From NCBI GenBank assembly GCA_001179505.1, contig CDMY01000281.1, forward strand, positions 1-64,000: 64,000 nt of DNA, in the 5' to 3' direction. The notes beneath the pieces are model-generated. The model was given only the letters and a program-made list of their open reading frames with translations, did no database searches and was not told the DNA's origin. Source of the stretch: Vitrella brassicaformis CCMP3155. Lineage: Eukaryota > Protista > Chromerida. Every line of letters starts with the position of its first letter. Position 1 is the first letter of the stretch. Made by a program: the position numbers and the translations under genes. Positions 28,488 through 35,583 of this stretch are shown piece by piece.

Positions 28488-29274
28488 CCTCTTTTCTCTC
28501 TGTGTCTGTGTTAAATGTTTTTCTTTGCCGTGAAACGCATGGGATGAATGTCTCTCTCTGGCTTCGTCCTGTCTTTGTTTTCCGATGTCTTGCTGAATCA
28601 ACAGAAATGTTGCGTAATCCCTGCCCTGCCATGTGTCGATATGTCTCTTGTTTCGCTACGTATTCGTGACAATGTCATGAGTTGTCAGTCTTAACTCTGC
28701 TCTACGTGTTGTTTGTCTGCAACAGCAAGAAGGAAGGGCACAGATGGACAGACATGTAGAGAGGACCGATTATTATCGTTGATACGAGCACAGCTGCCTG
28801 CTGGACTATATGATGTGTCTCTGCATCCGGTGCAAGGATTGCTGCATGATATCTTATCCCACCTGACAGACACAGCCCCGCTGACATCCACCCTACCCCA
28901 CAGCGTCACGGACAACCTCACACTACACTACTTCAAACTGCCTCACAACACATAGTAACATGTAGAAAAATGGCCATACGGAAAAAGAGGTCGCACCACG
29001 TTCAGGAAGTGAGTGACGAGGAAACGGGATCATGCAGCAGTGGCGTGGCACACAATGGTTAGACTGCAATTACGCGTGTTCTCCGAGATGCTCCTCCGAG
29101 ATGCCAGTGTCGGGCGGAAGGCTGACTTCGTGCTCCGGCACCATTGGCAACTCATCATCACCACTTCTTGGTGGTTTTGGTTTCGTCGTCGGCACGACGG
29201 GACCTCTGAGCAGGGAAATGGCAGAAGAAAAATGCAAGTCTCTCTGCACGGCGTGCCTCATGGGAGAGCGGGCC

Positions 29275-32200
29275 TTACTTCAGTCGAATATCAGAGAGTG
29301 TCGCATCGCTTGATGGAGCCAACCGCAGGTAGGACAATGTCGGATCGCCACTGCGCCTGCAGACATCAATGCATTGTGTGGGTAGTGACGGCACGCGTAA
29401 CAGCCACGTGTCTCTCTCTTTCTTACATGTCAGAGGCGGTGGTGACGGCCATATCGCCAACAGAAACCCTGCGCTTGTTACTGCCGCCCAGTGCCAGAAT
29501 GGCCTCAGGTATCTTGGGCAAAACGCTTTGCAGCGACACCTGCCGCTTGGAGTTTCTCGACACCTGCGTCTGCAGCTGCCCCGTGCCTGCCGTGCTAAGG
29601 CGGGTGGGCTGGTTGACTGATGTAGTGCGGCTGGGATCTTCTGCCTCCTTGCTGCCGCCTTTGCTGATCTTCTTGCCACCCTTGTCGAAGAGGTCGTTGC
29701 TGCGCTTGCTTTCCGTGTGGTCGAGCGTCTTGGACTGCGATTTGGGGGGGGACTTACTGCCCCCAAGCTGCAGCGCATGCTTGGCGAACGTGCCCCTACG
29801 TAGACAGAGAAATCAGAAAGCTATTGCAAAGGGGTGCTGTGCGCCGAGAGTTGGTGACTGACCTAGACGCGCCAGACACGACGCTGCCACGGTCGAACGC
29901 ACTGCTGCTGTCTCCGTGAAGGCCGCGACGGGAGCCCTGAACATAGAGAGGAGACACGATGATTGGCGCTGACATTGCGAGGGGGCACGTGTTCTCACTT
30001 TGAGTGCTTGCTCTATGCGTTTGAGGCGATCCTGGTAGATGGATAAGGACCGTACACAAGGACACTGACCACGATTCATTATACACGAACACCAGTGTCT
30101 TACGCACGTCGATGGCGATGTCGTCGTCATCTTGCCAGCTCTGTTTCTTGTCGTTCGGCCAAGGCGCATTGGGGTCTGACACTCAGAGATAACCAGGGAT
30201 TGGTTTCCGTCCCACAAAATCGAAACAGAAAAACAGACAGGATTACCTGTCGCCCCATGGAATCGCTGTATGCGATCCTTGACGAGTTTGTCCTCCTTGT
30301 TGGACGGCACCAACACCTGCTTGCCACCAGCCGGTCCGAGATCCGACTCGTCGAACTCGACTGGCTCATCGAAATGCATGTTGTTAAAAATCGCTATGCT
30401 GCATGGACCAGTCAACCCAACACATCAACACGGTGAGTAAGTGGGCTGAAGTGGCTTACAGCTTCTTTCTGGACATGGCGGCTTCCGTCTCCACCACCTA
30501 GCCATCATCTTCATCGGTCAACGTCATCAACATACGCGAGAGACAGTTCGACTTACCACTTTGGCTTTGTCCAATTTGGCGAAGCCATCGATGCGGTGGT
30601 ACACGAAATCGTAGCTTGTTGCCATAAGACCTATACCCCCGTACACACACGCATCGTATTCAGCTGTTCTCTTGAGCATTCACGCCAAGTGGGCCTTTGG
30701 CCGACCGATGAGGAGGTTCATCATCAGGATGAGTGCGAGTGTGACGTAGACGACGAAGAGCAGCTGCACGAACGGATCGTTGTGACCCCCGGCGAAGTCA
30801 GGCCTCCAAAGGCCCAACATCAGACTAAGACAGACAGACAGACAGACACATAGACCACGTGCACACACACTAGAGAGACAGACTCCGCATATTGGTACCT
30901 GTACAGAGTGAGAACCGCCGCAGGTACTGAGCTGAACTCCTGCAAACACATGCACACACCGCTCAAAACGACACATACGGCCACATTCTCTTCTTTGGGT
31001 TACACTGTCGTAGGCGAGGACGATGTGAAAAGCGCAGGCGAAGGCTATCATGATGAGAACCATCACGGCTATGAACTTCAGTATGTCCTCCATCAACTTG
31101 GCAATGGCGTGCAGAAAGGCTGACAGGGTCGGAACTGACACACACGGACGCACACACAGGATAAAGCTTCACAAATTACATCTAAGTGGCACTTACTCGC
31201 CTTGACGAACTCAAGTAAGAGGAGCCACATGAGTACGCCTGCGATGGCGCCCGACATTCGGAACCAGTAGACTTCACTGTCCGGATGGAGAGCGTTTTCA
31301 AGGCCCAAGTCGTCACTCCCTCGCAGCCTGCACGCACACGTGGTCGGTCGGTCGGTCGGTCGGTCGGTCGGGACGTATCCTTTCATCCACCCTGTCTTCC
31401 TGTTTGGGTGTGTCGGCAGAGGCACTGACCACGGGTCATTTGCTATGGTGACGAAGATTACTGCATCAGCCAAAGTACGGCCGGAGTTCCACACATTTCT
31501 GCCGGGATACCAGCACATGCGGGAACAGTAAAATGTGTTGGCTGTGCTTACACCAGCGCTCTCGGGAGACGGATGCCCAGGAAGGGGCGCGCAAACTCGC
31601 CACGCCTGTATCGACCATCCATCCATCGGTCCATCTATCCATTCGTGGTCGCCATTACATCTCTCCCTGTCTCTATCTGTGTGTGTCTGTGTGTGTTCGC
31701 ACCTGATCTGTGCAGCGCATCTGACGACTATCTCAGTGAAGTGCACCGCACACAGCAGATACGATACGGCGCGGAATGCAAAGCCCGGCCTGCAGGCAGA
31801 AGACACGAATGGAGAGCCGTGAAAGCGTGGAATTTGCTAGAAGGAGAGGTGGCCTGTTTCGCTCACGACTCTTGGGTGATGATGGTGAAGCCCAACATGA
31901 AGCATATGAGGTTGAACAGGTTGGTCAGACGCGACGGGCAAACATTCGCCACTTCATTCGCACAGCGTACTGCAGTCACAGGAGTCGCGTAGGCGAAGAC
32001 AGCAAAGGGCGTTGTGTGGCGTCAATCACTTGTCCTCTGTGCTCACGTCGAGCACTGGATGCGTTAATACGTCGCTGTCACTCAGCTCGACCAAAGTGCC
32101 CAGCGGCGAGTTCCACGCGTCCTTGAAAGTTCTGCTGCTCGGATCGCCCCAAAGTTCCTGGAGGTCAGGCGATGATGCAGACAACAAGACATTGATTTTG

Positions 32201-35200
32201 GAAAACCGGCAGCATTCACCTTGACGCAATAGTTGACTCTTCGAGCACCCTTGGTCACATATCTCGACTGCCACATCAGCCCATCCAGCAGCAGCGGCAA
32301 CAGTTCAGGGGCCTCGCTGCGTACATGCAAGAATGCAACAGACAAGAGAGAGTGATTCGAGAGCTGGTCGACAGAAGGCTCAGCTGGCTTACAATGAGAG
32401 GACGCGGAAGATGTTCGGGTGCGTCCGAAAGAGTTCCTCACGGCCTGGAGACATGCGTGCACAGTTGACAACTGTGCCAAGCAGATGGACACTGTTTTGA
32501 GCTGTCTCAACCATAGTAGTATTGTTGACGGTCGGCGCGGATAGCAAGCACATCTCGAAGCATGACTCGTGCCAGAGGCATCTTGCCATCACGAATGGAC
32601 CAGTAAATCTGCACGCAGTGAGTGAAGTAGTAGATCGACCAAGCCATGTGTGTGCTTACCGGCGACAGCACTGCGCCGTCCAGATCGACTTCGCATGACC
32701 AGCTGGCCCGCTCGCCTCTCGGAGCAGCGCTCAAAGCCCGCTGCAGCTCCGAGGGCTCCCCCGTGATGAGTGCCTTTGTCACCAAGTTGGTACCCGACTG
32801 AATGATGGTGTAGAATTTCACCGCCACTTGATGTGTCGAATGGCCAGCTCCCGCAGTTCTTTGGTCAGTCGGAGAGGATTTTCAACCGAGTCGCTCAACA
32901 ATCCCACCTGACAAATACACCACACTAATGCCGTGGTCAGACAAGGACATCAACACGTCCCACCGACCATTTTGCCAAACATCTGCAGGCACGCCCAATG
33001 ACAGACAGAGAGCAGACGAGACATCGCATGACATGGACTAGCGTAGGCTGCCACATGGACTAGCATAGCACCTGTCCCAGAAGGTGTTTGGGCTTGACGA
33101 ACAGGCTCTGCATCGCCGGAGCTGTTTGGAACAAAAAGTCATAGAATATGATGCCCAGCTGCTCCATGTCGACTGCACACAGCAAGGAGGGAACAACAGA
33201 TGCATGCGAGTCGTGGCTTTCAGATGCACTCACGTAGACCACGCGGGCTTCCATATATACATACATACATACTCCTCCGTGTGTGTTAGTGTGTATACAC
33301 CTGCGTCCTGGACGAGCTGCCAGGACTTGTGGATGACCGGGGCATGCTTGTGCACCTGATTGATGATAGTGGCCACCTCGTGGCATATTTGATCCAGCAG
33401 CCACATCCACGCCTCGGCCACGTCGGGCTCCGACTCCCATGTCCCCTCGCCAACCATGTCCCTGAAGAGACGCCGAGCCCCCAAACGAGTGCTCTCATGA
33501 CTTTTTCCCTTCGTGTCTCACTTGATGGTGTTTGTGATGGCCACTCTGATGCCCACGATATGGGTCATATCAAGTTTCAGCTTGAGACACTCCATGGCGA
33601 AGTCTTGACGACGTGTCTGGCAGGGTCAGACAGAGAGGACTCATGCACATGAAGATACCGACCGCTTGAGGCGGGTGCCTTCGGGTGATCGGTAGCTTAC
33701 GAGGCACTTGGATGTGTTGGTGATGTGCATCACAATCTGGGCGAGACGCGGCCCAAGCCGAGGCAAATCTGACTCGGTCTGAAACAGCAAAGCCGAAAAT
33801 GAGACAAACATACTGACTATTGGCGACGTCGCCGCTCACTGTCCGGCTCACCGCGAGTGACCAATCTGTTCTTGCTTTCATGGACTTCATGAGGCTGATA
33901 CGTCTGGCCGACACGCCGGTCACCCCCGTGACGGCCGTGACCTGGCTCTTGGCCTCGGACATGACGGCACTCTTGGCTTCAGAGACGGTGTCGTCAGCGC
34001 CATCGGACCCCTGGCGGGGGGAGGATGGGTCTTGGACGGTGCTCTTCTTCCTCATAATCGATCGTCCACCGCCCGAAGACCTGGCAGTACTGCTTGCGGC
34101 CGCCGAGCAGGTTGATGACTGTCTTTTTGACCTCAGGGTGGAGCTTGATGAGCTCGTTGATGATTTTGGAAGTGATCTCAAGCTGCACGCACTCACACAC
34201 ATCACATCGATGTGGTGCTCCTCCCACGGTATAGATATTCTGGTGATGTATCGGTGCTTCAAACCTCGATCGCTGGGTGCTTGACGTCCTCCCAGGTGTG
34301 TCTGATGGCTCCCACGAGTCTGAGGACAACAATGTGGCCACCAGAGAAGTGTGTGTCGAGAGAAGGACAGTTCATAATTGTCCCATCGACTGTCACCTTT
34401 CCGCGAGCTCCTGGCTCGAAATGAGCATCTCGCCTGAACATAGCAGACACAGACACAGACACACACGTCAAGGCTTCAAAAATGTATGGGCGTGTAGTGT
34501 GTGTGTCACTTACTGGCTTCGTCCCACATGTCGTTCTGACCCGAGGCCAAGAGGCCAAAAAGCACGAAACAAGAAACACTTGCTTGGGAAAACGAAGGGA
34601 GACGAATCTTATTTGGCTTCTTACTTACCCAGCTTGCCTCGGTGGCCGCTGTGAACTCACCATCCTCCAACAGATCTGGTGATCAGCAAAGACACAACGA
34701 GACAGAACAAGATCCCGGCGCGGTCCCCTGTCCCTGAGTGGCTTACTTTCGAGTGTGTCCAGCAGACAGGCCTTAAAAAGAGGGAAATACTCCGGACGGC
34801 TGCCGTAATCCACATGACGGATGCCGAGATCTCGCATCGTCTCCAGCAGGCTCTCCCTATCAGTCTGTGCCTCGACCACAAACAAGACACCAAGATGAAC
34901 GACTGGCCAAAAGACCGGGATGTGAGCGCCCGGGTGCACCTGGAAGAGGCCACAGATGGTAGAAATCATTTCGCCAAACCTGCGCCGTCGACACACACGC
35001 ACTCGTTGTACGTGACCCCAGCTGGCTGTTTTCGTGTGTGGCTGACTTGAGTGCCATGAGTTCCTTGGGCCTCTTGAAGAGGTGCCGCAGATCCGGCGCG
35101 TTCTTGAATACGTTATCGTACAGCTCCTCGCCGATCTCCTGAGTGCACGTGGACAGGCACATGAGGAATGGGCGCGTACGGCGGGCAAGATGCATCGAGG

Positions 35201-35532
35201 CATGCCTGCAGCGTGTATCTCTCCTTCAGGAGACCCCAGGTCTTGTCAATGAGCACTCCCCGCTCCTAGAGAGACGCAAGACAAGAACAGCAGGCGTAAG
35301 ACCGAACACAAGAAGCATATCTCACCTTGTCTGACATCTTTGGGCTCTTAGCAGCGTTATCGATGGAAGCCGAAGACGGCATCCTCTCCCCGTGGCTGTG
35401 GTCGCTCTTGGACCGCGTTGGGCTTCCGTCATCCTCCCATTGATCAGGGCTGGCACCATGGTTTGCCGTTTGATCAAACTGGACAGATCCATGCGCCGCC
35501 AAGAGGGCATGAAAAGGACACTTGCTGTCCAT
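29275..35532 (-). CDS. Globin-coupled TRP-like cation channel (3 globin domains, ankyrin-like segment, multi-TM channel, coiled/low-complexity tail); frameshifted near 32825
   Basis: Globin 1 ELYDNVFKNAPDLRHLF...LGIRHVDYG...YFPLFKACLLDTL. Globin 3 IFYDFLFQTAPAMQSLF...LAIRHIK. Ankyrin-like SPIYWSIRDGKMPLARVML. S5 EDILKFIAVMVLIMIAFACAF, S6 LLFVVYVTLALILMMNLLI. Confidence 0.8.
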
Positions 35533-35583
35533 TATCGCCGCAAACGAGTCACTTCTGAAGGAGGGGAGGGAGGGCAAGCCCCC

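What the first reader, a model, noticed from the sequence alone, without database searches (positions are those of the whole stretch)
33520..34310. Middle globin has Cys at the proximal His (F8) position
Seen: domain 2 reads AIRHTWEDV...IINELIKLHPEVKKTV...LGPRLAQIVMHI...RQDFAMECLKLKL...HIVGIRVAITNTI...AEAWMWLLDQI. FAMECLKLKL aligns with LGIRHVDYGS (globin 1) and LAIRHIK (globin 3), putting Cys (codon 33587-33589) at F8; B10 Tyr and CD1 Phe are also lost. Known: F8 His is essentially invariant in heme-binding globins. Inference: either a heme-free scaffold domain or a rare thiolate-ligated or redox-switch globin between two canonical ones.
Basis: partly seen in the sequence, partly recalled or inferred. 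Interest (0 to 1): 0.72.

Follow-up and report, generated by a model that had tools for sequence, protein, structure and literature searches.

The report
Degenerate heme-less globin relic, split by stop
The middle "globin" of this Vitrella brassicaformis gene is a decayed, almost certainly heme-free copy of its two neighbours, its cysteine looks like drift and not a designed heme ligand, and the cell's own mRNA cuts the domain in two with a stop codon.

Summary
The quoted peptides and the Cys codon (33589-33587, minus strand) are real. They lie in exons present in the mRNA of a Vitrella brassicaformis CCMP3155 gene, annotated as CEL99463.1 (427 aa). MAFFT, helix spacing and a sub-threshold Pfam match all put Cys284 where globins 1 and 3 have the proximal His (H85, H423). 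Tyr B10, Phe CD1 and Phe E11 are replaced by Ile, Val and Leu.

The unit is not statistically a globin. It gets no Pfam, PDB or BLAST hit, and its shuffle z-scores against its neighbours are 0.4-1.6, against 22.8 for globin 1 versus globin 3. It also carries a 53-residue insertion between helices C and E.

All assembled transcripts keep the 70 nt that the annotation removes as an intron. Helices A-C therefore end at an in-frame TGA (33996-33994), and the Cys-bearing E-H half lies in the +1 frame. Two further frame breaks follow downstream in the same mRNA, which runs on into a TRP/YVC1-like channel.

Best reading: a heme-free relic of a globin repeat in a broken, still transcribed gene. A thiolate-heme globin is very unlikely. 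No orthologues could be retrieved, so conservation of the Cys is untested. The scan earlier noted similar broken globin-channel copies elsewhere in this genome (s1-233245).

The parts
34265..34319 (-). Exon with helix A of the middle unit (P0003 ~143-161, Trp152).
   Evidence: Both flanking introns (34396-34320 and 34264-34183) are confirmed by RNA contig joints and by mRNA L001.
34081..34182 (-). Helices B and C of the middle unit: Ile169 at B10, Pro177 at C2, Val183 at CD1.
   Evidence: hhalign puts it in register with globin 1 residues 9-42, E 0.06. It is the first part of a 331-nt mRNA exon.
34011..34080 (-). A 70-nt stretch that CEL99463.1 removes as an intron. It is retained in every transcript contig.
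   Evidence: L001, L002 and L003, the X1 contig and the MMETSP ORF P0004 all read through it. Its splice-site score is 6.1 bits, against a mean of 11.8 for the gene's 36 real introns. It has 61% GC and is mildly coding-like in the ORF1 frame.
33994..33996 (-). In-frame TGA that ends ORF1 (N-terminus, globin 1 and helices A-C of the middle unit) in the observed mRNA.
   Evidence: L001 positions 890-892. L001:26-892 is read as a stop-free 288-aa ORF. P0004 ends here.
33852..34010 (-). A 53-residue low-complexity insertion between helices C and E, in the +1 frame relative to helices A-C.
   Evidence: P0002 and P0003 sequences. Predicted disordered. Codon-usage LLR is +0.39 per codon in the ORF2 frame.
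33701..33778 (-). Exon with helix E of the middle unit (Leu at E11).
   Evidence: mRNA exon. Predicted helix at P0003 253-269.
33522..33616 (-). Exon with helices F and G of the middle unit. The Cys284 codon is at 33589-33587.
   Evidence: mRNA exon. MAFFT aligns C284 with H85. Predicted F helix at 276-286.
33301..33461 (-). Exon with helix H of the middle unit, running straight into helix A of globin 3.
   Evidence: Pfam Globin gives a weak match over helices G-H.
34397..35265 (-). Globin 1, seven exons. It is canonical: Tyr31, Phe45 and His85 (codon 34816-34814).
   Evidence: Pfam Globin E 9.8e-16. Best PDB match is 3s1i, Hell's Gate globin I, E 1e-13.
32818..33340 (-). Globin 3, helices A-F (His423 codon 32835-32833), ending at an in-frame TGA at 32820-32818. 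Coding goes on in the -1 frame.
   Evidence: 33% identity to globin 1, E 8e-16. The mRNA is identical to the genome here. ORF3 (187 aa) starts at the stop.

Best explanation
The middle unit is a decayed copy of the same globin repeat that gave globins 1 and 3. It keeps the order of helices A-B-C-E-F-G-H and a few fold-marker residues. It has lost every residue that holds or tunes heme: His F8 to Cys, Tyr B10 to Ile, Phe CD1 to Val and Phe E11 to Leu. It has also gained a disordered insertion of about 53 residues between helices C and E. It therefore most likely binds no heme, and the Cys is a product of relaxed constraint, not a ligand.

In the mRNA that the cell actually makes, the unit is not even one reading frame. 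Helices A-C end at a UGA, and the Cys-bearing E-H half lies in the +1 frame. Two more frame breaks follow before the TRP/YVC1-like channel part. Under standard decoding only the N-terminus, globin 1 and a short helical tail would be made.

Shown here: the sequence facts, the exon structure, the retained 70 nt and the three frame breaks. Inferred: descent from a globin, absence of heme, and drift as the cause of the Cys.
For: Organism and annotated model.

Extreme divergence of unit 2 compared with units 1 and 3.

Weak matches, all colinear with the globin helix order:
- Pfam Globin over helices G-H, E 0.033.
- hhalign over helices A-B, E 0.06.
- ESM features, where the nearest clusters are all Globin, score 0.84.
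- VIA-align of the low-confidence model, where the best matches are globins and non-heme RsbR globins over helices E-H, Z 7.2-8.6 with about 100 residues aligned.
- About 30 of the 50 weak Foldseek rows are globins.

The predicted helix pattern parallels globin 1.

Transcript evidence: the X1 RNA contig reads from 34182 through to 33992. L001 (ERR558152) and L002/L003 (JGI 3300017297) hold a 331-nt exon at 34182-33852. The MMETSP ORF P0004 ends at the TGA. Gene calls on the mRNA give four ORFs in different frames. The 70 nt make a poor intron.
Against: - Codon-usage signal is still positive in the expected frame on both sides of each break, and there are no extra stops, so decay is recent at most. 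A minor spliced isoform, or recoding, could still join the two halves.
- Contigs cannot exclude a low-abundance transcript lacking the 70 nt.
- Removing those 70 nt does restore the frame exactly, as the annotators assumed.
- Globin ancestry of unit 2 rests on several weak, not fully independent hints.
- No orthologue or paralogue was available to test whether the Cys is conserved.
Confidence: 0.66

Rival explanations
1. The stretch between globins 1 and 3 is not derived from a globin at all. It is a helical linker with a disordered insert, and its likeness to a globin, including 'Cys at F8', is a by-eye coincidence.
For: There is no significant similarity to units 1 or 3 or to any globin. Z-scores of 7-8.6 are below what the tool asks for helical folds. 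An ESM score of 0.84 is only a lead. AF2 confidence is low.
Against: All the weak matches fall in the correct colinear register: A-B with A-B, and G-H with G-H. Trp in helix A and Pro at C2 are kept. The length and helix count match a globin once the insert is set aside. The structural hit lists are enriched for globins and RsbR-type globins. The unit sits between two true globins.
Confidence: 0.17
2. The full protein is made after all, either from a minor isoform lacking the 70 nt or by ribosomal frameshifting at the three UGAs. The heme-free middle unit then acts as a structural spacer between two heme-binding sensor globins that gate the TRP/YVC1-like channel.
For: One mRNA spans the globins and the channel. 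The coding signal is intact in each successive frame. Each break coincides with a TGA, and the new frame is open there. An earlier scan note reports other transcribed 'broken' copies in this genome.
Against: No spliced or edited form appears in any assembly. No slippery heptamer is visible at any break (my reading). A stop within 4 codons of break 2 has a chance probability of about 0.14, given an off-frame stop density of 0.038, so the TGA coincidence is not significant. Breaks 2 and 3 cannot be cured by an intron of the gene's usual size without deleting a helix (my reading).
Confidence: 0.12
3. Cys284 is a real axial thiolate ligand of heme, or a redox-switch residue, in a functional sensor globin.
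For: Only the position of the Cys in the alignment. From my own knowledge, engineered myoglobin H93C shows that a globin fold can hold thiolate-ligated heme.
Against: The rest of the heme pocket is gone: B10, CD1 and E11 are aliphatic. There is no Cys-Pro or P450-type motif around the Cys. A large insert sits in the CD region, which normally closes the pocket. The domain is split by a stop in the mRNA. No conservation data exist.
Confidence: 0.04

Closest known systems
FHb-like single-domain globins (Hell's Gate globin I 3s1i/3ubc, HGbRL 3wfw, thermoglobin 7dih)
   Same: Globins 1 and 3 of this gene belong here by sequence: E 1e-13 to 3s1i, with Tyr B10, Phe CD1 and His F8. The middle unit has the same helix order and the same spacing from F8 to helix G.
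   Different: The middle unit lacks His F8, Tyr B10 and Phe CD1, has a 53-residue CD insertion, and has no significant sequence match.
Non-heme globin-fold sensor domains (N-terminal domain of RsbR and stressosome proteins, 2bnl, 7b0u)
   Same: A globin-like helical fold that has no proximal His and binds no heme. They are among the best structural matches of the model, at Z 8.3 and 7.3.
   Different: They are bacterial, and they are single functional domains of an intact protein. There is no sequence relation, and here the unit sits in a eukaryotic tandem-globin gene and is interrupted by a stop.
Diverged globin domains inside large chimeric proteins (e.g. androglobin; PMC11077535, PMC13331133, abstracts listed)
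   Same: A globin unit embedded in a multidomain protein, interrupted by an inserted segment and hard to recognise by sequence.
   Different: Androglobin's domain is circularly permuted. PMC11077535's title reports atypical heme stabilization and nitric oxide interaction for it, so it is still a heme domain. Here the heme-contact residues are all lost.
Engineered myoglobin H93C and natural heme-thiolate proteins (P450, NOS) - from my own knowledge
   Same: Cys at the proximal position of a heme pocket.
   Different: Those have a complete hydrophobic pocket and, in P450, a conserved Cys-loop motif. Neither is present here.

Membership tests
Globin (Pfam PF00042) | Significant match to the family profile | tested here: not met
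   P0003:136-345 gives no Globin match at E<=10. There is only a 15-bit match, E 0.033, over helices G-H in P0002 (cut-off 22 bits). Globin 1 scores 58.7 bits.
Globin (Pfam PF00042) | Proximal His at F8 | tested here: not met
   Cys284 aligns with His85 and His423. The nearby His293 matches the G-helix His/Tyr of HGbI and globin 1, not F8.
Globin (Pfam PF00042) | Phe at CD1 | tested here: not met
   Val183, by extending the hhalign register and by MAFFT.
Globin (Pfam PF00042) | 3-on-3 alpha-helical fold, helices A-H | tested here: inconclusive
   The predicted helices fit the pattern and globins head the VIA list at Z 7.2-8.6. But the model has pLDDT 48, and even globin 1 gets about 40-50 in single-sequence mode.
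Globin (Pfam PF00042) | Binds heme b | not testable with these tools
   Needs expression and spectroscopy.
FHb-like single-domain globins | Tyr at B10 | tested here: not met
   Ile169 aligns with Tyr31.
Non-heme globin sensors (RsbR N-terminal type) | Globin fold without heme ligands, as the functional sensing module of an intact protein | tested here: inconclusive
   Structural likeness of Z 8.3 (7b0u) and 7.3 (2bnl) on a low-confidence model. No sequence match. The unit is not one ORF in the mRNA.
Heme-thiolate proteins | Cys ligand within a conserved ligand loop and an intact heme pocket | tested here: not met
   The sequence context of Cys284 has no Cys-Pro or P450-type loop, and the pocket residues are lost.

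The most novel reading that the evidence does not exclude
The three frame breaks are bypassed, by a minor splice form or by recoding at the UGAs. Vitrella would then make a triple-globin TRP-like channel in which the middle unit, with Cys in place of the proximal His, serves as a thiol-based redox element or thiolate-heme element between two heme sensors.
Probability: 0.03. Interest if true: 0.8.

Novelty: new member of a known kind. Interest (0 to 1): 0.22.

Why it matters
As it stands this is an ordinary case of domain decay. One repeat of a tandem-globin gene has lost its heme residues, and the gene is broken in three places yet still transcribed.

Its practical value is as a correction to the public annotation. 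CEL99463.1 (UniRef A0A0G4EPR9) joins the two halves of the unit through an intron that no assembled transcript supports, and it stops at a frameshift.

It would matter much more if intact relatives kept the Cys, or if the breaks were decoded. That would give a natural Cys-for-His globin, and a globin-gated TRP-like channel, both open to test.

Tried and rejected
- Frame-A worry. I briefly read the junction of the helix-E and helix-F exons one base off. That put an 'RLRHG' motif with a His, followed by a stop, in frame. The mRNA and P0002 show the junction is phase 0 (CTC|gtaagc ... ccag|ACA), so the Cys frame is the right one.
- Enumerating GT..AG paths gave hundreds of open solutions and decided nothing.
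- Searches for relatives all failed. The word search with exon e12 found only an unspliced genomic ORF. The one HMMER library job, also with e12, found only P0001 and P0002. Word searches with P0003 and with the channel ORF found only themselves. Two metagenome scans found nothing. tblastn found no paralogue in the window. Conservation of the Cys therefore could not be tested.
- AF2 without an alignment is uninformative here: pLDDT is 48.5 and 41.1, and the control globin 1 does equally badly.
- Foldseek found nothing significant, and the Atlas structure search found no globin.
- Shared intron positions between the units are only near-coincident, 2-3 nt off. With an intron about every 25 codons this is not evidence.
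- Programmed frameshifting: the coincidence of breaks with TGA codons is not significant.
- The G and H helices of globin 3 in the -1 frame are not statistically supported.
- Literature searches found nothing on Vitrella globins or globin-channel fusions.

Full report
**What is there.** The finding lies on the minus strand of an intron-rich eukaryotic gene. An exact-sequence look-up identifies the organism as Vitrella brassicaformis CCMP3155. The annotated product is CEL99463.1 (UniRef A0A0G4EPR9), 427 aa, called a 'Globin domain-containing protein'; it is P0003 here. Two transcript contigs were fetched: L001 (Logan assembly of ERR558152, 4320 nt) and L002 (JGI 3300017297, 4001 nt). They align to window 35557..28596 as 37 exons separated by 36 introns of 51-128 nt. 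All the introns are GT..AG except one GC..AG. Run X1 in read laying is RNA and independently shows the same joints.

**The flanking units are real globins.**
- Globin 1 (P0003 ~5-135) matches Pfam Globin at E 9.8e-16. Its best solved relative is Hell's Gate globin I, 3s1i, at E 1e-13. It has Tyr31 at B10, Phe45 at CD1 and His85 at F8.
- Globin 3 (from ~346) is 33% identical to globin 1, with E 8e-16 and a shuffle z-score of 22.8. It has Tyr370, Phe384 and His423.

**Is Cys284 at F8?** Several lines agree.
- MAFFT, run without guidance, aligns the stretch around His85 with the stretch around Cys284, without gaps, through helices F, G and H.
- The pattern of five residues before the ligand is kept in all three units: acidic, hydrophobic, small, hydrophobic, charged.
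- The distance from the E-helix Gly is 28, 27 and 27 residues in units 1, 2 and 3.
- The distance to the start of predicted helix G is 7 residues in units 1 and 2.
- His293, the only nearby alternative, lies nine residues after the Cys. It matches the His/Tyr that opens helix G in HGbI and in globin 1, so it is not F8.
- In the hhalign register, Tyr B10 becomes Ile169, Pro C2 is kept (Pro177) and the helix-A Trp is kept (Trp152). Extending that register, Phe CD1 becomes Val183. In the E helix, Phe E11 becomes Leu.

The observation about residues therefore holds.

**Is it a globin at all?** By sequence statistics, no.
- BLASTP finds nothing against units 1 or 3.
- Smith-Waterman scores lie 0.4-1.6 SD above shuffles.
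- Pfam and PDB searches with the unit alone find no globin.

What supports globin ancestry is a set of weak matches, all in the correct colinear register.
- Pfam Globin matches helices G-H at E 0.033.
- hhalign matches helices A-B at E 0.06.
- The nearest ESM-Atlas feature clusters are all globins, at a score of 0.84, which is only a lead.
- A predicted helix pattern A-B-C-[65 disordered residues]-E-F-G-H parallels globin 1.
- Globins and the non-heme RsbR-type globins head the exhaustive structural comparison over helices E-H, at Z 7.2-8.6 with about 100 residues aligned. About 30 of the 50 weak Foldseek rows are also globins.

The AF2 models are of low confidence (pLDDT 48.5 and 41.1). The control shows that single-sequence AF2 does no better on the bona fide globin 1, so low confidence says nothing either way. 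I put globin descent at roughly 80%.

**What the mRNA shows.**
- The annotated protein joins helix C to the rest by removing 70 nt (34080-34011). No assembled transcript does this. X1 reads from 34182 through to 33992. L001, L002 and L003 have a single 331-nt exon at 34182-33852. The MMETSP ORF P0004 runs on through the 70 nt and ends at the TGA at 33996-33994.
- On a splice-site matrix built from the gene's own 36 introns, the 70 nt score 6.1 bits. The leave-one-out mean is 11.8, and only 2 of the 36 real introns score lower. They rank 59th of 599 exon-internal GT..AG decoys and have 61% GC, against 52% for introns. Their codon usage leans to the upstream frame.
- In the mRNA as observed, helices A-C therefore end at a stop. 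The 53-residue insertion, helices E-H with the Cys, and helices A-F of globin 3 lie in the +1 frame (P0002, 247 aa).
- Two more breaks follow. A TGA at 32820-32818 comes four codons after His423, with coding going on in the -1 frame for 187 aa across five splice junctions. A TGA at 31927-31925 lies where the channel ORF's first predicted hydrophobic (transmembrane-like) segment begins, again with coding going on in the -1 frame, into a 579-aa ORF that matches Ion_trans and YVC1_C.
- Genomic contigs from other runs agree with the window base for base, so these breaks are not assembly errors.
- Codon-usage likelihood remains positive in the expected frame on both sides of each break.

**Interpretation.** The simplest account is that a tandem-globin N-terminus of a TRP/YVC1-like channel gene lost heme binding in its middle repeat. 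That repeat then drifted far faster than its neighbours and took up a disordered insertion. The gene has since suffered three frame disruptions while still being transcribed. The Cys is then incidental. This agrees with an earlier scan note that two other globin-channel copies in this genome are also broken (s1-233245), which I could not check.

The alternatives are ranked in the report sections:
- a non-globin linker;
- a full-length product made through a rare splice form or through recoding;
- a true thiolate or redox globin.

The coincidence of breaks with TGA codons is not statistically telling. The off-frame stop density is 0.02-0.04 per codon, which gives P of about 0.14 for break 2.

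**Limits.**
The key test, conservation of the Cys, remains open.
- Contigs cannot exclude a minor spliced isoform.
- I did not type or search a self-joined protein read across the breaks. Only database proteins and loci were used, by reference.

Noticed in passing
window 28596-35557 (-); TGAs at 33996-33994, 32820-32818, 31927-31925: One mRNA carries four successive ORFs in frames 2, 0, 2 and 1: globin 1 plus half a unit; half a unit plus globin 3 helices A-F; a 187-aa linker; and a 579-aa TRP/YVC1-like channel. Coding signal is intact on both sides of every break. This is either a young transcribed pseudogene or some form of recoding.
   Followed up: partly
window 34011-34080 (-): The public model CEL99463.1 bridges the first break with a 70-nt intron that no transcript assembly removes and whose splice sites score poorly. 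It then ends at the second break, so the annotation is likely wrong.
   Followed up: yes
window 35139-35205 (-): A GC..AG intron, confirmed by the mRNA. The other 35 introns are GT..AG.
   Followed up: yes
window 32968-32982 (-): A 15-nt micro-exon (five codons at the start of helix E of globin 3), confirmed by both mRNA contigs.
   Followed up: yes
window 33852-34010 (-), P0003 ~228-240: MAFFT pairs a seven-residue stretch of the inserted exon with the start of the F helix of globin 1 (S-L-x-x-[ST]-M-[KR]). It may be chance, or a remnant of an older helix.
   Followed up: no
window 31380-31700 and 33250-33280 / 34447-34470: (CA)n/(TG)n-rich intron tracts make genomic contigs of other runs break, or join falsely, here (the 'skips 1169' joint in DNA runs X2 and X4).
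   Followed up: no
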